Assembly: GCA_001179505.1 (NCBI GenBank)
Contig: CDMY01000371.1
Location: 33,460 to 97,459 of the forward strand
Direction of reading: 5' to 3'
Length of the DNA: 64,000 nt
Source: Vitrella brassicaformis CCMP3155
Lineage: Eukaryota; Protista; Chromerida
The position numbers were made by a program, and so were the translations under genes. Shown here piece by piece: positions 41,504-53,638 of the stretch. The notes beneath the pieces are model-generated. The model did no database searches. It saw only the letters and a program-made list of their open reading frames with translations, and was not told where the DNA came from. Each line of letters starts with the position of its first letter. Position 1 is the stretch's first letter.

Positions 41504-44500
41504 TCAGACGCATGCGACGACCTGGAAGACGCATCGTGCCTCCAGCAGCTGGCCCTCTGAGCCAGCTACCGATCCCACGATCCGCAGCACCTCCTGGATG
41601 GGCTCACGGCATATCGGGCACTCTGGCAGGCTCGGACGGCGGTTGCCCCGCTTCCGCGCACGAGTCGTTAATGGCTGCACACATACACAGACACAGAGCG
41701 AGAGAGAGATAGGTGCGAAGAAGCAAGGCAGGTGGACGCAGCCAGCCAGCCAGCCAGCCAGCCGTGTGTGTGTGCCCCTCCGATCCGCCCACCCCACATA
41801 CATACGGTACGTACCTCTTTGAGGAATTCGCTGGAGCATTCGATGCAGAGTCCGCCATGGCCGCATGGTTTGAGCACCACATCAGCAGCTGCACTGCAAC
41901 AGATGGAGCAGAAGGGCATGTCCACCCCGGCAGACCCCTGCCGCCCATCCTCAGGAGGACCCACAAACACCGCCGGAGCCGCAGTCGGCCGGGCCATGGA
42001 CACACACACATCCGATGCTGACGAAGGGAACGGGTCGGGCCGCTCGTCCGGGAGATGGTCCGGCGGGCTGGTGGTGCTGGCGCCCACAACATCCTCACTA
42101 TTCACATTGCCGCCCCCACCCCCACCGCCACCGTTGGTCATGTCTGTGGGCCGCCCGATGATTGCCCGTCGTGTCGCCCGTGCAAAGATGGTTGCGGCCC
42201 GCGGGCGGGCGATAGTCACGACGGAAGGTGCGTTGCTGAGGCTGGGCTTGTCGGCTGACCCTGACCGTCTCCTCTTGAAGAGCGCCATGGCCCTCTCCTT
42301 CCAGGTGATGCGGATGCGGCTGGTCTTCCTCTCGAGGTCGAACCTGGGCGCAACGTCGTGGCCGGCCGGCATGACGTTGGCCTTGGCGCTCTCGTCAGCC
42401 TGCACTGTCACGCGAGACGGACACTCGGATATACCAGACGAGAAACCTAAGCAAAGCATCACAGACAGACCGAGGCGGTTGGCTTCGTTCGCTGTGTGCT
42501 GCGGTTGGTTGTCCGTGTGTGCGTCAGTGAGGTCAGTGAGTGCGTCAGTAACTGACCTTGTTCCTCTACGAGGAATTTGTCAAGTCCCCTTTGGAGTCTG
42601 GAGAGGTCACCGTAGAGGGCGTCGCTGACCTCCGACTGGTGGTCGCCCGGGTCCGTGTGCTGGTCCTTGTCGCCACCCACTGGCACCGGTGAGCCCGCCC
42701 CACCCTCTCCACCCTCCGGCTGCTGCTGCTGCTGCTGCTGCTGCGAGGAGGGGTCAGCTCCCTCCTGCTGCTGTCTGGATGTCGTGCATGTGGCACATGC
42801 GCAAGACGAGACCTTTTGGAGCCGCAAAGCTGGGCTTCTGCACGCCTCGGTTTCAGAGGCGATGGACCCCTCGCGATCGTCCGACTCGCCTTTGCCGCCA
42901 TTGGCCGGCTGGGGCCGGGGCTCGGACCCCTCACTCCCAGACTTGGCCGCCTTGCACGGCCGTCCACCCTGCCCCTGCCCCTGGCCCTGTGCACGGGGGT
43001 GGTTGTTGGCCGCCGAACGACGGGAGTCAGTGCTGCCGATGTCAGACGAATCGTCATTGAACCTGATGAAATAAATAGAATACACGGGGAGGAAGGAAAC
43101 ACACGTAAGTAAATGATACCTTCCTTGCTTGCTTCTGTCTACGTGCGGCACTCAGTTAACTGTCTGCGTGTTCACCTCACCGCCCGCCTCCCTCCCTCCC
43201 TACCTAAAGAAAGTGTTATTGACTTTAGTGAGAGTGGATCTGCCCGAGTCCGCTGGCGTCCTGAGGGCGGCGGCGTCGTGTGCCTCGGAGCGCGCGAGTG
43301 GCGAGGCCAGGTCCATGCGATCGAGCTTGGGTGGGGTGGCGGCTGGCATGAGGGAGGGGGAGGCCAGCTGCGACTGCTTCATGCGAGAGAGGGGGCTGAG
43401 GCCGCTGGTCGACGGAGGTGCGCCGCCGTGGAAGGCTGCCTGGTGCTGGGGGCGCTGGCTGGGCGAGATGACGTAGTAGTGTGTGGAGAAAAGCACCACG
43501 TCACCCAGCTGACCCGGCGACACACCCCCCCGGTTGTTGAGGCTGGTGGCTCCGTCGGGCAGCCCCCCCGACCCGCCCCACAGCAGCCCCGCACCCGACA
43601 TGCCCGTCACGCTGCTGGCAGATGGGGTGGCGGCGTCGACGCGGGACGAGGGGGTGATCATGTCGAGTATGTTGGATGACGACTGCTGATGGGGGCCGAC
43701 GGCCGGCCCCTCCATCCCGAACCCCTGAGGGCCGTACTCGACGTCAGTCGACGGCGACGCCGCATCGCGATCCTCTCCCTCAGCAGAACCTGATGGAAGA
43801 CACATACACAACGCAGGTGGCAGAATTCCCGACCCATACATCCCATGCCATGCAGCCAGGCAGCTGGGCCAGCCACGCCTTTTTTCGTGCATGCCATGCA
43901 TTGACTGTATGCATCCATCCATCCCTCCCTCCCTACCCCATGGGCCTTGTCCGCCTCGGTGTCTTTGTTGTTTGCCCTCGATGCGATAAACGGGTGGGGT
44001 GACGGTGGCCGAGTGTGTCGACTGCAGCTCCAGTGGCGTAAGGCACTGACAGTCGCTCGCTTTGCGGCACTGGTCGCTGCTGCACGAGGCCCTCTCATGG
44101 CGGCCGTCGTCGTACCGCACGTCCCTCTCGCGCAGCACTATGACGCGCCGCCTGTCGGGGTCCGACTGGTGGTCCTTGTCAGGCTGCTTCCGCAGCATGC
44201 CCTTCCTCGACGTGATGTGGGATGTTATCTCCTTAAGCGCACTCGAACGAGAACGCCCTGCACTCACACATACACACAAACATACATACCAACGTGGCAG
44301 ATGGCCAACGACGTCGATCGATCGATCAGTGAGTGTGTGTGTGTGGTGGGTATGTACATTGCCACAGTAGTGCGGCGGGTAGAATGATGATGACCAGGCA
44401 TCCAATCGGCAAGATCAAATAGTACACATACCAACCTAAACACACACACACACAGTCGACACACCCATAGATATTCGATCCCATCTGGTGTGTCCTGTCT

Positions 44501-45973
44501 GTCTGTCTGTCTGTCTGTCTGTCACTCACCGCGTTGCGAGCCCTTGTCCTTGTCGATGTGTGTGTCGGTGTCCCCACCGTCCGTGTCGCCCTCAGCCGTC
44601 TCCTTGGCCAGCACGAGGGAGCGCTGGTAGTTGTGTTGATTGAGCCACACCACTCCATCCCCGTCAGCACTGCTGGTCCTGCGCGCCACCTCCAGGTGCA
44701 CGTCGAAGCCCATCCCGCGGCTGCCCGTGCAGTTGTGGCCTGCAAAGGGCATCGCCTGGATCTTGATCAAGCGACCGTCCTCAGGCGGAGTGAAGAACGT
44801 CACGGAACTCACTCCACGCTGAGACAAACCATCACCTGCACCCAGCCAGCCACAGCCAGCGAAAGGAGGGGGATTGCCTGCCTGTGTGTGTGTGTGTGTG
44901 TGTGTCAAGTATGTGCCCGGCCTGCAAGCGTGACTGCCGCCCACCCACCCACCGACCCTTGTCTTTGCTGCCTTGGTCTTGGCCCTTGACCTCGCCCTGC
45001 ATGTGGGCGACAGCGGCTCGGCCGTTGACGTAGTAGCAGACACTCTGAGGTGTGCGGTGTTCTTTGGGGAATGTGATGGCGGCAGCGCTGATGCTGAGTG
45101 AGGTGGATGAGGGAACCTGCAGCAGCGGCACCTCAAATATGTCGTGGGACATGCTCGTCGGCGACTGAAAAAAGAACGACGGCGAGTCGGCCCCTACGCC
45201 ATTCACTGACAGACGGGATATAGCAAAACCTGAGTAATGAGTGGAGAGACAGACAGACAGACAGACAAGACAGCCAACCGATAGATAGGCAGATAGATAG
45301 ATACGTGGAATGGGAGCGGATGCCCCACACCACCCCTCAGCCCACGTCAGGTTTGATTAAGCTGACTGGCTGACTTACCGGCCTCTCCTTGGGTGGCATT
45401 GGCGGCTGCGTCTTGTTCGACTTGGCGGGCCTTGTCTGCGCCTGGCCCCTGGTCCGTCTGCCGCATCACGTCCTCGGGCCGGTTGACGGTCTCCAAGTTC
45501 TTGATGCGGGCGTCCTGACACTCCACGGACAGCCGGAACTCCCCGATGGCGTTGGAATACCCCGCAACCACTATAATGTAGTTGCCCGGCGGCACGTCCA
45601 CCGTCAGGCGGCTCTTGAGGTAGCCGAACGACTCGAAGGCCTCGTCGTTGTAACCCACACAGTAGTCGCTGCCGTAGGCCTCTCGGTGCCTGGCCGCCGT
45701 GGCATCCCTGTCCTTGTCGCTGCCCGAGAAGAGGGCCAGTCCAGCTGCATCGATGGGAGGGCCCCTGTCCTGGTGGGCCTTCATCTTGCCACTCGACTGG
45801 GCCCGCTTGGTGGAGTCCCGGCAGTCGGCCAGGACGGCTATGATGGTGTCGAAGGACGTCAGCAGGTGGTCCGTGCTCACAGTCAAAGAAATGCTCGCGT
45901 CCGACGCATTGATGTTGCCACGCGGATTCGACGTCCACGGCCGAAGCGACAACGAATACAGAATCTGACTCAC

Positions 45974-46006
<33 letters not shown>

Positions 46007-47399
46007 GCACACCACATGGCAAGAACAATCACTTGCAGAGGTGGCACTTGCTCTCCACCTGTGGGCTTCCCGATGTAAGCCCGCATCCAGCCACGGCCTC
46101 AGCCGTGCTGGCCCTGTTGGATGCGTCAATGACATCACCGCAACTAAGGGAGTTCTCTGGATGTGCCGTCAGGGATGCGGCCCAGGAGGGGTGTGGCAGG
46201 GGCGGCGACAGATTGGTGAGGGGGCAGAGGAAGGGCAGTGGCGTCCTGCCGTCATCGCCTGCGACCTCCTCATCTTCCTGTGCACTTGTCGTGTCGGTGT
46301 CGTTGGCCGTGTCGCTGGCGTCCTCATCGGTGGTGTTGAGTGCGGTGGTGGGTGCCGTCGAGTAGAGGACGATGCAGTCCCATTGTTCGTCTTGCTGTTC
46401 GTCCTTCTCTGCCATGGCCTTGACCATGCCCAGGTCGCCCCCCTGCCTCAGGAACCGCCCGTTGCGCGAGAGGGTGGTGGCCGTGGTCCTGGCGCGCTTG
46501 GGTGGGCTGCGGCTGGTGGTGCCGGGCGTGGCGTCCAGATCGGTGCCGTTGTTGGGACAGCCGTCCTCTATCGGCAGACATTGCGCAAACACCTGATAGA
46601 TCAATGGACACACGACACGACCTCGTCATGGTCACTGGCTGGTCAAAGAGTGTCTTGTCTGGGTGGGTGGATGGCTCACTTCGTTCTTTCGCAGACAGAC
46701 ATATCCCGGGGCATCACAGCATTGGGTGTCCTGACACTCATCCAGTGGACCAGACGAACAGGCTGACACACACACACACGCATACGGTCATCCACTCCAC
46801 GCAGCCCAGCCCCCCACACCCCATATGTCTGTCGGCTGTAATAGTGTGTGACCTGCTCTGGGCAGTTTGGCACAGGTCCAGCTGAAGGGGTCAGGTTCCT
46901 CGGGCGGTGGGCAGGGCTCGTTGAAAGGACGGCACTGAGCGTAGTACTGATAGAACCAAACGAGGGAGGGAACAGCGCAACGGTCGGTACACACGTGTGC
47001 ACATTCTGATTTGGTGTCGTGTGGTCCAGAGTGGGTTGCTTGGTTGCTTGCCTTGTCCTTTTCCTTGCAATGGAATCCGGGTGTGGAGCAGCATTGGCTC
47101 TCAAGGCACGGCTGGAAGGGGGGCGTGGAGCACTCTGACCATTCCATCCACACACACACACACACGTGGATGCACACACACCACACGCACAAGCAGTCCT
47201 TACTTACCAGGTTTGGGTAGGAAGCTGCAGGTCCAGTCGGCAGGCTCCGGGTCGAAGGCAGGCGGGCACGGCTCCTCCACCGGACGACACTGGGCGTAGT
47301 ACTGGGGGGATTCACACACACACAACCGTCACGTCAATGTCAAGCATCAATCAATAGTCGGGTGGGTGCGTGCGGTCAACGTCTGTCTGTCTGTCCGTC

Positions 47400-47430
<31 letters not shown>

Positions 47431-48001
47431 TTGCTGACTGCCTGCCGGACTTTGTTTTTTTCCTTGCAGACAAATCCCGCGGTGTTGCAGCACTGCATGG
47501 CCGTACATGCCTCGAAGGGACCGATGGGACAATTATCAGCCCCGTTGAACACTGACACACACAAACACCACACCAGCGCTTCACACTAACTAAGAGGCCG
47601 TTTGCTGTCGGTGTGCCAGCCTGTCCGTCTGTCTGTCTGTCTGTCTGCCTGACCTAAGGATGGTCGACCTGGAGCATCGGCCTCTTCGGGCAGAGCTGGT
47701 AGGTTCCGTTGTCGGGCGGTCGTCGCGTTGAAAAACGCCTCAACAACACCGCCGCCCTCAGTCACACTTTCAATCGCCTGACAGACAGACAGACAGACAT
47801 CGAAGGCCGGAGGGAAAGGAGGAAGGAAGGAAAGAGGCTTCAGCGCTTCGGTGAGCGTGTCAGACGCCTCTGTGCCATCTATTATCAGTCAGCCCAGCAC
47901 CACCCACCCACCTGAGTGACCACCGGTGCGTGGGCTGCTGGCCATATTGTGTATGACGGGAGGACTGCTGCTCCTGCCAGGAGGCGGACGATATGCCACA
48001 T
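41504..48001 (-). CDS. Single-pass receptor-like protein: signal peptide, 3 Cys-rich repeats, PPC-like domain, TM helix, C-terminal RING-HC (putative E3 ligase); ~18 exons, roughly 1500 aa
   Basis: All exon junctions were checked for phase. Signal-like MWHIVRLLAGAAVLPS..; three repeats C-x6-C-x4-CC-x5-C-x5-(Y/V)(Y/F)AQC; PPC-like FDTIIAVLADC..YNDE..SRLTVDVPPGNYIIVVAGYSNAIGEFRLSVEC; TM YVYYLILPIGCLVIIILPAALLW; RING CSICCSAAADVVLKPCGHGGLCIEC..|..CPICREPIQEVLRI. Confidence 0.8.
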
Positions 48002-48104: not shown

Positions 48105-51100
48105 TCAAGCTGCATTGACTCTTGTTTTGCTGTCGTCGGTCCTTGTGACATGGAGCTTCACACACTGCCCGCACCACACCACCGAGCCCGACGACCCACT
48201 CCCTTGCCCACTGGTATCATGGCCATCATGTGCACCCGAGACAGAGAGCACCAAGGCAAAGTACACCTCACCCACCACACAAGGCCTCATCTCTACACGC
48301 ATCGTGTGCCACCCGCTGTCTGCCTGCGGATCACCCTTCCTGTCAAATGTCCTCTCCATGTTGCCCTCGGTCTGCAGCCAAGCCTCGACGTCAGCTGGCC
48401 CAGCACCAGGGCCGCCACCATACACAAAGGGGAAGACGCCAAGCCTCGCCGTGGGGCCGACGCCTTGATCACACCCTCCAAGTGGACCACCGATAAGGGC
48501 CTTGCCCTCGAGCACGATGGACATGTCTGCTGGGATGGAGTAACACACCATATTGCCGGGGCCGACGCATCGCTGCACCGCAGCCTGTGCTTGCTCATCG
48601 GATGTCGCAGAGATCGACAGGTCCATCTGCACCTGAAAGACAGACAGAAGAAGGGCGTACGGAAAGACAGCAGGCGAGGCGGCTTGATTGACTCTTAAGT
48701 GTGGTACCTGTCTATGAGTGTCGTTGCCAGCCATGTCGGCCACATAGTGCGGCGATGGCAGCCCAATAAAGCCCCTGCGTGGCCTCCTGCGACCGTGATG
48801 GCCCCCCAGGATGTCTTGCAGCGATGCCGCCCTCTTGACCCCCGATGCAGGGTGGCCGACCATGGTTGCCTGGTCGGAGGGCAGGCTGAGCAGCACCCAC
48901 CCCACACCCAGACGCCTGAAGAGGTGCTCCAGGCCATGCTCGGGGGTGGTCTGGCATCTGTGGGTCAGATGCAGCACTGACTCGTGTGGGCCTGCCGCAC
49001 CCACCACCTCTGCCGTGGTTGGCGCCTCATGGTCAGGGGCCGCCTCCTGGATCCAGCAGACCAGGTGCTCGTTGGCCTTGGCCTTGGTCTTGATGGAGGC
49101 CGTGATGGCCACGTGGTCAGATACCACATCGGTGGCGCCGGGGGCCGTCTCGCGACTCAACGCTGCTGTCAAGGCGGGGCTGTACATGCCTGAACTCGAG
49201 GCTGCACACACAAGACAGACAGGCAGACCCGAAAGAGAGGGAAATCTGTATGCGCTCGATTATCTTTCTGTCTGCTTTGCAGCCTCTTGTGCCTGCCTTC
49301 CTACCTACCTAATTTGGCGAGCTGTCCGACGTCGAATGCGGCGAGAGGCGAGCACCGGACCCGTTCGACAGTGAGGACATCGGCCACCGACACCTCGATG
49401 ACCAGCGATGCAATCTTCCAACGCGCGAGGGCCGCGCAGTCGTCAGCTGGACTCGTGCAGTAGCGAATGCTGCATCGCATTCACGCAGAGAACCAACCAA
49501 GCACACAAATCATTCATTAAATCATTCACTCAGTGAGTAAGTAAGCTGCGGTGTGTCGGCTGACTGACTGACCTGACGATGCATCCGGGGTGTGCTAACG
49601 AGGCGACACATTTAAGGCCCAGCAGCTGCTCGGCGCCCGGTGCGAAGACCGACGTATTGGCACCGCTCTGAACGACCGCCCAGGCCTCATCAAATGGTAT
49701 CGTCCCCTCGCCGCCCGCCGCATTCTCCCACTCGTCAAGGGCCGACAGCTCTACTGACAGGGTCTGGGCCGGCAGGCTGGAGGCGTTTCTGATGACGACA
49801 TCGACATGCACCAGCTCGCCCTCATACAGCAGCGATGACGGGAGCGGCCGCGGCACCTTGCTGCATGTGAGGGTGGGCAGCTCTTCCACCACCTCAAATG
49901 CCGTCAGGTAACTCGCCGACTTCTCGCCCGCATCGAAGAACTGTGTCTGTCGACAGTTGAGGGCCGTGAACTCCACACCAATGAGCCGCCCCCTGCCCAG
50001 CTGGCCGGCGCGCATCCACAACTCACACACGACGTCGCCATCGTCTGTCCGCCTCGCATCTTGCGGCACGATGCGGCTCCCTGCCAATGGGCCGCCCGTC
50101 GGTGTGGGGGAAGTGGATGATGCAGCGCATGACGACGGCAACACGACCGATGTGGGAGGCGTCTCGATCGGCACACCGTTTCTCTCTGCGATGAGGTGCA
50201 GCCCGTCGAGCAGCAGTGGCAGAGGCAGGTACTGGCGAAAACACAGCTCCACTTTGCACATGTCGCCACAGGGGATGATGCACGGGCCGCCAGACGGGGC
50301 AGCAACCGAGACTGTGCTGCTGGCCCGCTGCCGTTTGCCGAAGGGTGCGAAGAGGAAGACATCCCGGTGTGCTGCGGACGGTGAGGGCAGGCTGACACGG
50401 GGGGTGGGGGAGGACTCATCTTGCTCTTGTTCGGGCACACTGACCTCCACTGTGGTGGCCCACGACATGGCCGGGGCGCCGGGGATGGGCTGCCGGTGGG
50501 AGAGGGACGGGGTGACGATGTTGATGCTCACGAGAAAGGGCACAGGCGGCACACACGATTGGGGGGACAGGTGGAGACGACTGGGGTCCACCGTCACGCG
50601 CATGTCGGACGGGTCGCTGTAGACGAACATCGAGGGCACACCGCAGCTCCCGCGGCGAGAGGTGCATCGGCAGCTGCTGAGTAGCCTCAGGGGTGGGTTG
50701 ATCTGCGCGGCGACGGCCTTGAGCTGATCGATAATCATCAGACACCGCGTGAAGTCACGCTGGCCTTTGCTGACGTCCGTGGCCGTGGCCGTGGCCGTGC
50801 GGCCCGCCGGCGTGGTTTCCCTCCTGGCGCGCTCATCCACATCGATCTCCAGTGCCAGCAGGGCATAGAGGTACCACGCCTGCTTGGCCTTGCTGGCCTC
50901 ATTGGCGGCCACACCAGAGAGGAAGGTGAGCATCTGCCGCTGCAGAGATGGCCAAGAGGGTGAGCTGCAGGGCCACACACCGCAGGGGGAGGGTGTGCAC
51001 GCAAAAGGGGGCGCGGAAGGGACGCACGACGCCCGGTCGCCCGATGGACTAATCGACGGCTGCACACTGGGCGGCGAGAGCCTCAGTTTCTGCTGGTGTC

Positions 51101-53638
51101 GCGCCAGATGCTGACGGGTGGTCCTCTCGCCACTCTTGGCAGCTAGCTGCTGGTGCGCCGGTGAGGTTACTGCGCCACTAAGAACCCCACCTGCATCACC
51201 AGGATGATGCAAGCACATGGGGTCAGCTATGACGACGAAGTGCCACCATGAGGCCAGCAGAGCCACGATCCTCTCGCAGTAGTGGAGGCTCTGGGACTGC
51301 ATCGCCAGCATGATGTACCAGCCAAAGCGGCGATAGGCACCCATGTAAGCACAGCACGAGCTCGCCTGTAACAAGGCCTCCACTCGTTCCATCGGGCCCA
51401 TGTCGAGGGTGGCTGACTGATGGGGCTCTTGTGGCGTTGAGGACTCCGGGATGGCGTGTGGGCCGTCTGTGAGAGATCGAGGGGCGGCAGGGGGGAAGTG
51501 GATGGCCGACGAGAGGGAGAAGGAGCCGTCAGCCACCGGGGAGGATGCGATGGTGGCGGTTCCTGAGCGCATCGGCGGGCTGGTCTTGAGGGATGACGTC
51601 TGGGGGTACGAGTGGGAGAGCGCACGGCTGGACAGGGGGAACACGTGCTGGTCCACCAGCTTGGTCAGCAGCTCCAGGGCGGCCCGCCTGCCCTCGTACA
51701 TCATGGCCGCAGTGGCGCTGCTGCTGGAACTGCTGCTGCTGTTGCTGCTGGGCATCCGCAGCTTGACGCTCCCCGTGACACTGCTGCCCAGGGCATGTTT
51801 GTGAGCCTTGCTGCTGGTGTAGGGGTCCTCGGGCAGCGGCAGGGGCACACCACATCTGGACAGGGTGATGTACAGCCGCACCAGCTTCAATGTCCCGTCG
51901 ATGTGCGGCAGAGCCCCCATCTTTTGGAACCGCCCGAGCGCCTCTCGCTGCCGGCTGATGACCGTCGCCAGGAGTGTATTGCCCGCCTCACCCTCTGCCG
52001 TGGTGGCCGTTGTAGGGGGGGCCGAGCTGGGTGCTGAGTCAGGCTCCTCGTCCGATCCACTCGCCGCTGTGGCACTGGCGCCACCGCCGGCCTTGGACTT
52101 GATGGCCACCCCTGCTGTGGCCGTGGCGACGGCGGGAGCAATGAACTGCATCATGATGCCGCCCATTTGCTTCTTGTGGCGGCTGTCGCACAGCTTCTGC
52201 ACCACCGATGGGAAGGACGGGCCAGGCATGGCCGACGACACGAGCGACTCGCCAGATGAGCCAGTGGTGAGAGCCCCCGTGCTGTTGCCGCCCTTGGCCT
52301 TGAGCTGCACCTCACCAGCCCGCAACCTGTGCTGCAAATAGAGGTAAAGCGCCCCGGCCTCAGCCTCCATCGTGGCTGCATGCCATAACGGGTCGCCCTC
52401 CGTGCCCGACGAGTGGGAGGGCTTCATGACCTCCACGGCCGTGGCGTAGAAGGAGAGTGCGTCGATAGGCGAGCCGACGAGCAGACAGAGGTCGCCCTTG
52501 TACTTGTGCTCCCGGTTGGCCTGCTGCTGCTGGTGAGGCGTGGCCCGGGAGGTGAGAAACTGGGGTGCGAGGTCCAGAGGGGTGTGCAGGGATGGGGAGC
52601 GGCCGAAGAGGGTGCCCAGCTGACGCATCAGGAAGGTGCAGAAATCATGCCTGCTTCCATCCATCAAGTGACAGACAAGAAGGCAAAGCAACAAAATGTG
52701 TGTGCGAATGAATGGACAGGGTGTGGCGTGGTGCGGTGTCCTTATTTATGTTCATACATGACGGTTGTGATGTAGTGGCTCAGGTGACGCTTATCCTGTC
52801 AGTCAGGACACACACGCACCCACACACCACACACACACACTCCCTCTCTGGTGGGTGGCTCATGTATGTTGTCAGTTAGTTCCTTGGTCACTCACTCACT
52901 GACTCACTGACTCACTGACTGACTCACCTGGTTGGGGAAGAGCACATAGTGGTCGAGTTCTTTCGAACGTGCCTCCCTCAGCTTGTGGGTCCCCTCCCCG
53001 CCACCATCACCATCCTCTTCCCTCTCAGGGAGCTCCTGCTGGTGGTCCAGTGGCTCGAACGCCAGCAGCCGGTGCACCAAGACGCTCCGCAGCCCACTCA
53101 CTCGCCTCTGGTAGTCGCTCTTGTAGAGCTCCCGCGGGTCGCCACCGCACGAGGGGCAGTGCAAGAACCCCAGGGCACCGTAGATCTGGTGCGACGGCCA
53201 CAGCCAGTCCCAGTCGCCGGGCTCATAGATGGTGGCCTCGGAGGTGCCATCGAGGTCATCTGCCTCGATGAATGACAGGCGGAGTGCGCCGTGCTGTCTG
53301 GGCAAGTGGTGGAAGGGCGACAGATAGGGGTCCAGCGGCGAGAGCGTCAAGCTGGCGAGGTCAATGACGCTGCACGACTCCCGGATCCAGCTGGCATACT
53401 GCAAACACATGATAGACGCATTCAACAGACCGATGACAGACAGCGAATGATGAATGAATGAATCAGTCAAGAGCCGGCGCTGCTCGGACATACGGCAGCC
53501 TCTCGTTCATTCCTCTCTTTCTCTGTCTGTCTGTCCATCACTTGGTGTCACCTTTCGGAATTGTGTGTGGTCTGTCTTGCCGACGGGGAAGAGCAGCACG
53601 CGTATTGTCCACGCCGATTCAAACGATGCATCCAACAT
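48105..53638 (-). CDS. TRAPPC9: TRAPP II subunit TRAPPC9/Trs120-like
   Basis: The N-terminal IRVLLFPVG..F..Y, SPF..GALRLSF and HQIYGALGFLHC match the Trs120 N-terminus. KYKGDLCLLVGSPIDALSFY..DPLWHAATME is the conserved TRAPPC9 motif. The C-terminal exons (49464-49309, ~49198 onward) join in phase. Confidence 0.85.

What the first reader, a model, noticed from the sequence alone, without database searches (positions are those of the whole stretch)
41504..48001. Receptor-like transmembrane RING E3 ligase with extracellular Cys-rich (CBM1-like) repeats and a PPC-like domain
Seen: phase-consistent splicing of ~18 exons gives signal peptide, three Cys-rich repeats ending (Y/V)(Y/F)AQC (the first two followed by C...W-x-C), a PPC-like beta-sandwich, a further ectodomain segment, one TM helix, a long disordered tail and a C-terminal RING-HC of the C3HC4_3/MGRN1-IAP type. 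Established: the ..C..x..YY.QC end resembles CBM1 carbohydrate-binding modules, and single-pass RING ligases (RNF43/ZNRF3, plant ATL) control surface receptors. Inference: a ligand- or glycan-sensing surface ubiquitin ligase. I know no described family with this architecture, making it the best candidate for an undescribed signalling system in the window.
Basis: partly seen in the sequence, partly recalled or inferred. Interest (0 to 1): 0.75.

Follow-up and report, generated by a model that had tools for sequence, protein, structure and literature searches.

The report
Membrane RING ligase with wall-binding-type ectodomain
The alga Vitrella brassicaformis has one orphan gene for a single-pass membrane protein with cysteine-knot repeats and a PPC-type beta-sandwich outside and a ubiquitin-ligase RING finger inside; the layout is unusual, its function is untested, and the protein is already in public databases without a name.

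Summary
On the minus strand (48001..41504) a phase-consistent multi-exon gene encodes: signal peptide, three Cys-rich repeats, a PPC-like domain, a further beta-rich segment, one TM helix, a roughly 650-residue low-complexity tail and a C-terminal C3HC4 RING.

A public protein of Vitrella brassicaformis CCMP3155 (P0001, 1548 aa, "RING-type domain-containing protein") contains every exon peptide in order. That gives 17 exons and removes the fragile 23-nt micro-exon.

- **RING:** meets Pfam zf-C3HC4_3, and all eight metal ligands are present.
- **PPC-like domain:** the Pfam PPC model misses it. Support comes from phmmer hits to bacterial and protist PPC-repeat proteins and from the top fold matches (collagenase PPC and collagen-binding domains).
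- **Cys repeats:** they fail the CBM1 and hevein HMMs. They belong to a Vitrella module family with a conserved intron, found next to PAN, fasciclin and (in a divergent copy) PAN-GH3 domains. This fits glycan or wall binding.

No ortholog or same-architecture relative was found, and no close paralog of the PPC-like exon, exon 12 or the RING. Function is inferred only.

The scan earlier noted other receptor-like RING ligases elsewhere in this genome. Those are different genes, and I did not check the notes.

Verdict: a real gene, a new variant of transmembrane RING ligases, of moderate interest.

The parts
41504..48001 (-). Whole coding region, start codon to stop codon; 17 exons in the preferred (public) model, 1548 aa
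47912..48001 (-). Exon 1: start codon and predicted signal peptide (30 codons)
   Evidence: read from the sequence, no predictor run
47208..47551 (-). Cys module 1 (exons 3 and 4, split by a phase-0 intron just before the YYAQC motif)
46853..47134 (-). Cys module 2 (exons 5 and 6; the intron between them has a GC donor at 47051)
46557..46762 (-). Cys module 3 (exon 7 plus the first 12 codons of exon 8); it lacks the trailing W-x-C part
45506..46148 (-). PPC-like beta-sandwich domain, residues 367-549. It spans the exon 8/9 intron and has an insert of about 36 residues
44957..45229 (-). One exon in the public model.
44530..44835 (-). Exon 12: membrane-proximal ectodomain segment that looks beta-rich by eye; no family assigned
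44358..44435 (-). Exon 13: the single transmembrane helix (phase 1 in, phase 1 out)
41911..44257 (-). Cytosolic low-complexity tail (exons 14-16 and most of exon 17), rich in S, G, P and R
41609..41910 (-). RING-HC finger (C3HC4; residues 1461-1514), split by the last intron (41675-41814)

Best explanation
This is one gene of Vitrella brassicaformis for a type I single-pass membrane protein.

The non-cytosolic part carries three small eight-cysteine (knottin-framework) modules, a glycosylation-prone acidic and Thr-rich linker, one PPC-type beta-sandwich and a further unassigned segment. After the membrane helix come a long disordered tail and a catalytically plausible RING-HC finger.

The most likely mechanism is a receptor-like ubiquitin ligase. 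The outer modules bind a wall or surface glycan, or a glycoprotein. The RING recruits an E2 to ubiquitinate the protein itself or neighbouring membrane proteins, and so sets their turnover.

The gene structure, topology and domain identities are shown here. Ligand binding, location at the cell surface and ligase activity are inferred.
For: **Gene model**
- The model is phase-consistent and equals an independent public prediction.
- That annotation came from Augustus with strand-specific RNA-seq intron hints (PMC4501334).
- Codon bias fits the model frame in all exons of 90 codons or more.

**Topology**
- There is one hydrophobic span, followed by basic residues.
- Eight of nine sequons and most cysteines lie on the N-terminal side.

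**RING**
- zf-C3HC4_3 scores 30.5 bits against a cut-off of 27.
- All eight ligands are in order, and the two halves lie on two exons.

**PPC-like domain**
- phmmer against 1.84 billion representatives gives 123 hits down to E 1e-16.
- 16 of 31 short hits carry Pfam PPC.
- An iterated profile covers residues 367-446 and 483-549.
- The AF2 core strands have pLDDT 70-87.
- The best fold matches are PPC domains and collagen-binding domains: Z 7.0-7.8, rmsd 1.8-2.5 A over about 80 residues.

**Module context**
- Both halves of the module, with the same intron position, occur at other Vitrella loci.
- These copies sit next to a fasciclin domain and a PAN domain.
- A weak, divergent copy sits next to PAN plus GH3.

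**Wall chemistry**
- Chromerid walls are reported as mostly cellulosic. This was measured in Chromera, not Vitrella (PMC9293442).
Against: - I saw no transcript data for this locus, so continuity of the ectodomain and RING halves rests on prediction.
- The Cys modules fail both the CBM1 and the hevein HMMs.
- No solved structure is related by sequence.
- The PPC assignment is transitive. The Pfam PPC model itself does not hit.
- Fold Z scores under 8 are in the range the tool calls common.
- The RING lies about 650 residues from the membrane, unlike known receptor-type RING ligases.
- There is no ortholog, so conservation cannot argue for function.
- The gene starts only about 100 nt after an upstream same-strand open frame ends.
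Confidence: 0.55

Rival explanations
1. It is an endomembrane RING ligase. The protein stays in the ER, Golgi, endosome or vacuole with the Cys/PPC part in the lumen. It would act in cargo sorting or quality control, as the PA-TM-RING proteins RMR, RNF13 and RNF167 do, and would not sense anything outside the cell.
For: A signal peptide plus one TM helix gives the same topology for lumenal and extracellular exposure. Many single-pass RING ligases are endosomal; this rests on established knowledge, not tested here. No surface-targeting signal was identified.
Against: The same Cys module is found in genes with fasciclin and PAN domains, and a divergent copy in a PAN-GH3 gene. These are typical of secreted wall or adhesion proteins. 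There is no PA domain.
Confidence: 0.2
2. It is a gene-model fusion. A secreted Cys-module/PPC protein and a separate cytosolic RING protein have been joined by prediction. The TM exon, or exons 14-16, would not be part of one mRNA.
For: No transcript evidence was available. If intron 12 is read through, a stop follows at once, giving a secreted product of about 785 residues (read).
Against: Exon 13 encodes a clean 24-residue helix and keeps phase on both sides. Exon 14 opens with a basic stop-transfer stretch. Tail exons show coding-frame codon bias. The independent public model makes the same joins.
Confidence: 0.12
3. It is a wall-anchoring or adhesion protein, and the RING only controls its own turnover by auto-ubiquitination and endocytosis. 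There would be no signalling or substrate role.
For: The ectodomain is built from adhesion or binding-type modules. The long tail shows no recognisable substrate-binding domain.
Against: Nothing here separates this from the main reading. It is a narrower version of it.
Confidence: 0.13

Closest known systems
RNF43 / ZNRF3 and the wider PA-TM-RING group (GRAIL/RNF128, RNF13, RNF167, plant RMR)
   Same: Signal peptide, a ligand-binding domain on the non-cytosolic side, one TM helix and a cytosolic RING. They control turnover of membrane proteins.
   Different: Those proteins have a PA domain and a RING-H2 close to the membrane. Here there is no PA domain, the RING is RING-HC of the zf-C3HC4_3 type, and it lies at the far C-terminus after a tail of about 650 residues. 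No sequence relationship was found.
Pre-peptidase C-terminal (PPC, PF04151) domains, including the collagen-binding domains of clostridial collagenases ColG and ColH
   Same: Residues 367-549 match PPC-repeat proteins by sequence. The model's best fold matches are these domains.
   Different: The Pfam model itself does not hit. The domain has an insert of about 36 residues. It sits in a eukaryotic membrane protein instead of a secreted bacterial protease or T9SS protein.
CBM1 (fungal and oomycete cellulose-binding module), and Phytophthora CBEL (CBM1 plus PAN/Apple; from my own knowledge)
   Same: A small disulfide-rich module ending C-x3-(N/D)-x-aromatic-aromatic-(A/S)-Q-C. In other Vitrella genes the module is paired with PAN domains, as in CBEL.
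   Different: It has eight cysteines with a CC pair and a shorter first loop. The CBM_1 HMM gives no hit. The fold could not be tested.
Yeast wall-stress sensors Wsc1 and Mid2 (from my own knowledge)
   Same: A Cys-rich head, a glycosylation-prone linker, one TM helix and a cytosolic tail: the layout of a wall sensor.
   Different: There is no WSC domain, and the output would be a RING ligase instead of Rom2 recruitment. This is only an analogy of layout.

Membership tests
RING finger, zf-C3HC4_3 (PF13920) | HMM score above the curated cut-off | tested here: met
   30.5 bits against a cut-off of 27 on P0001, residues 1460-1521. Exon 17 alone scores 31.3 bits on model positions 4-33, and exon 18 covers positions 37-49.
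RING finger, zf-C3HC4_3 (PF13920) | Eight metal ligands in C3HC4 order | tested here: met
   C1461, C1464, C1476, H1478, C1482, C1485, C1511, C1514. The last loop is long, at 25 residues.
RING finger, zf-C3HC4_3 (PF13920) | E3 ligase activity with an E2 | not testable with these tools
   Needs an in vitro ubiquitination assay.
CBM1 (PF00734) | HMM match | tested here: not met
   No hit on the contiguous public protein at E<=10. No hit on the window's exons in a six-frame genome scan at E<=1.
CBM1 (PF00734) | Four-Cys spacing plus a flat aromatic face | tested here: inconclusive
   The end motif and its spacing agree. The first loop is shorter and there are extra cysteines (the CBM1 pattern is from my own knowledge). 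The fold was not predicted, because the modules are split by introns and the public protein exceeds the folding size limit.
Hevein / CBM18 (PF00187) | HMM match | tested here: not met
   No hit in the window in the genome scan at E<=10, and none on P0001.
PPC domain (PF04151) | Direct Pfam HMM match | tested here: not met
   No hit on exon 9 or on P0001 at E<=10.
PPC domain (PF04151) | Sequence homology to proteins that carry PPC | tested here: met
   123 hits down to E 1e-16. 16 of 31 short hits carry PPC. The iterated profile covers both halves of the domain.
PPC domain (PF04151) | Beta-sandwich fold like collagenase PPC and collagen-binding domains | tested here: inconclusive
   The top five matches are PPC-type domains, Z 7.1-7.8. 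However, Z stays under 8, the model's mean pLDDT is 61.6, and exon 9 lacks the first part of the domain.
PA-TM-RING ligases (RNF43/ZNRF3, RMR, GRAIL) | PA domain in the ectodomain and a RING-H2 near the membrane | tested here: not met
   There is no PA hit. The RING is the HC type and lies at the C-terminus.

The most novel reading that the evidence does not exclude
The protein is a cell-wall or surface-glycan sensor whose output is ubiquitination. On this reading it is one of several unrelated ectodomains that Vitrella has fused to a TM helix and a RING. Earlier scan notes, which I did not check, describe two other such types in this genome. Chromerids would then use receptor-like E3 ligases as a general class of surface receptor.
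Probability: 0.2. Interest if true: 0.7.

Novelty: new variant of a known kind. Interest (0 to 1): 0.4.

Why it matters
Known single-pass RING ligases with a ligand-binding outer domain (RNF43/ZNRF3, PA-TM-RING) control receptor abundance in animals and plants. No such system has been worked out in alveolates.

This gene pairs a RING with modules that, elsewhere in the same genome, sit beside PAN and fasciclin domains, and in a divergent copy beside a glycoside hydrolase. That gives a concrete, testable candidate for coupling wall or surface sensing to ubiquitination in a free-living relative of apicomplexan parasites.

The claim has limits. It is one orphan gene in one species, known only from prediction, and nothing about its function has been tested.

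Tried and rejected
**Searches that gave nothing**
- Exon-by-exon Pfam scans gave nothing except the RING.
- The CBM_1 and Chitin_bind_1 HMMs over the whole genome gave only chance-like hits elsewhere.
- The exact AG|YYAQC exon-start pattern occurs only twice in the genome, both times in this gene.
- PDB sequence searches with the module profile and with the whole protein found nothing.
- The ESM Atlas gave only weak PPC and galactose-binding-like leads for exon 9, and an unnamed ciliate cluster for the module region.
- Foldseek against PDB gave no match at E<=0.001.
- Word-index searches with residues 60-810 and 1400-1548 found only the protein itself.
- I searched with an intron-read-through reference to fetch the annotated protein of a module-bearing paralog (contig C333).
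- A second PPC-like copy in residues 592-785 was looked for and not found.

**Steps not taken**
All whole-protein tests used the public protein id returned by a search.
- The Cys modules could not be folded. Each is split by an intron, and the public protein (1548 aa) is over the 1200-aa limit.
Full report
**Source and setting**

The window's assembly has 72,700,666 bases in 1064 contigs. This matches the published Vitrella brassicaformis assembly of 1064 scaffolds and 72.7 Mb (PMC4501334). The protein search also names Vitrella brassicaformis CCMP3155 for the product of this locus. The gene lies on the minus strand.

On the same strand, an upstream open frame ends at 48105, about 100 nt before the start codon at 48001. 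It lies downstream of a 1054-codon frame with a weak TRAPPC9/Trs120 match.

**Gene model**

I read the minus strand and checked the exons by coordinates. Sixteen introns are GT-AG and one is GC-AG.

A phmmer search with exon 9 alone returned a public protein, P0001 (1548 aa), that is 100% identical over the exon. A script showed that all exon peptides occur in P0001 in order and at the expected offsets.

The one difference is that P0001 reads straight through 45206..45165. All other introns here are 73-149 nt, and the 42 nt are in frame and open, so I prefer this version. What still matters is use of the acceptor at 45230/45229, which no data available here can show.

The public annotation was made with Augustus using strand-specific RNA-seq intron hints.

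Codon statistics were trained on the neighbouring 1054-codon frame. They give positive log-odds only in the model frame, and GC3 of 0.71-0.83, for every exon of 90 codons or more. This includes the low-complexity tail exons.

**Topology**

A hydropathy scan of P0001 finds a single span at about 786-809. It is encoded by its own 78-nt exon (phase 1 in, phase 1 out), and basic residues follow at the start of the next exon. Exon 1 reads as a signal peptide; I ran no predictor. Eight of nine N-x-S/T sequons, and 32 of the 54 cysteines, lie on the N-terminal side of the span. This is a type I layout.

**RING**

Pfam zf-C3HC4_3 matches residues 1460-1521 at 30.5 bits against a cut-off of 27. Exon 17 carries model positions 4-33 and exon 18 carries positions 37-49, which also supports the last splice. 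All eight ligands are present in C3HC4 order, with a long (25-residue) last loop. The closest RINGs in the same genome are only about 35% identical over the core.

**PPC-like domain**

Pfam PPC does not hit directly. The evidence for the domain is as follows:
- phmmer against 1.84 billion cluster representatives gives 123 other proteins, with E down to 1e-16. All match residues 95-160 of exon 9, usually several times per protein.
- Of 31 short hits, 16 carry Pfam PPC. Others carry related galactose-binding-like or T9SS domains.
- A profile iterated locally on these hits (121 positions) aligns to P0001 at 367-446 and 483-549. This is one complete domain that starts in exon 8, crosses the intron and holds an insert of about 36 residues. 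No second copy is present.
- An AlphaFold2 model of exon 9 with these hits as its alignment has a mean pLDDT of 61.6, with 70-87 in the strands.
- Foldseek gave only weak matches.
- The exhaustive aligner ranks these first: the Tk-subtilisin C-terminal jelly roll, the collagenase pre-peptidase C-terminal domain, and the ColG and ColH collagen-binding domains. Z is 7.0-7.8 and rmsd 1.8-2.5 A over about 80 residues.

Each line is modest. Together they support a divergent PPC-type sandwich.

**Cys-rich repeats**

The three repeats share all their cysteines and are 44-61% identical by halves. Each has a phase-1 boundary before the first Cys and a phase-0 intron just before the aromatic-aromatic-A-Q-C motif.

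The framework, C-C-CC-C-C, is that of knottins. Its end motif and spacing resemble CBM1, and its first part resembles hevein; both comparisons are from my own knowledge. Neither HMM detects the modules. The full public protein shows no CBM_1 hit at E<=10, and the genome scans give no hit in this window.

Profiles of the two halves find the same split module elsewhere in the Vitrella genome:
- Contigs C333, C236 and C585: signal peptide, one module and an unassigned region estimated from one paralog at about 150 residues.
- Contig C179: two modules flanking a fasciclin domain.
- Contig C338: a module followed by a PAN domain.
- Contig C365: a weak, divergent copy (E about 1) lacking the CC pair, followed by PAN and a GH3 glycosidase.

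This company is typical of carbohydrate-binding modules. Chromerid walls are reported as mainly cellulosic, measured in Chromera (PMC9293442). Glycan binding is therefore a reasonable inference, but it is not a tested property.

**Relatives**

The PPC-like exon, exon 12 and the RING have no close paralog in the genome. Word-index searches with the ectodomain and with the RING region against 5.8 billion proteins returned only P0001. These searches see only proteins of 851-2709 aa. None of the 123 PPC-like hits has a RING pattern or the Cys module. No solved structure is related by sequence. By these searches the gene is an orphan with a private architecture.

**Mechanism**

What is shown: one predicted gene, type I topology, a competent-looking RING, a PPC-type domain, and a Cys module family used in wall-type and adhesion-type proteins.

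What is inferred: the outer part binds a glycan or wall component, and the RING ubiquitinates the protein itself or its neighbours.

The rivals are an endomembrane sorting ligase, a prediction that fuses two genes, and an adhesion protein with self-turnover only.

**Comparison and novelty**

The protein works like the receptor-type RING ligases (RNF43/ZNRF3, PA-TM-RING) but fails their defining features. It has no PA domain, and its RING is RING-HC at the far C-terminus. I rate it a new variant of a known kind.

Earlier notes of this scan describe two other receptor-like TM-RING types in the same genome. I did not test them. If they hold, this gene is a third case of a theme in Vitrella.

**Limits**

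No transcript data were available. The modules and the membrane-proximal segment could not be folded, for the reasons given under Tried and rejected.

Noticed in passing
L009 (G000:C333:27325-30387), L016 (C236:83480-86539), L018 (C585:42801-45863): A small paralogous family of short secreted proteins: signal peptide, one copy of the same Cys module (same intron before the aromatic-S/A-Q-C motif), then a conserved region with no Pfam match, estimated from the C333 gene at about 150 residues.
   Followed up: partly
L010 (G000:C179:88937-92002): Two copies of the Cys module flank a Pfam Fasciclin domain on the minus strand. Further repeated segments around them are unassigned.
   Followed up: partly
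L021 (G000:C365:23587-26655) and L019 (C338:88238-91303): A module copy is followed by a PAN domain. In C365 a more CBM1-like, divergent copy without the CC pair precedes PAN and a GH3 glycosidase. That module hit is weak (E about 1).
   Followed up: partly
window 48105-52694, minus strand: The upstream same-strand gene is a 1054-codon frame with a weak TRAPPC9/Trs120 match (19 bits, below the cut-off) plus a 368-codon frame. It ends about 100 nt before this gene's start codon, which is a very short intergenic gap.
   Followed up: partly
window about 47400-47440, 47630-47660, 45975-46015, 45250-45270 and 44495-44530, minus strand: Runs of the tetranucleotide CAGA/GACA (or its complement) sit inside many introns of this gene. 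They give the DRQTDRQT-type peptide repeats seen in spurious ORFs.
   Followed up: no
window 47050-47051, minus strand: Intron 5 uses a GC donor (GCAAG) instead of GT. It is the only non-GT donor in the gene, and the public model accepts it.
   Followed up: partly
window about 43980-43991, minus strand (P0001 residues 898-901): A P-P-x-Y motif lies in the cytosolic juxtamembrane tail. It could recruit WW-domain ligases, or it could be chance.
   Followed up: no
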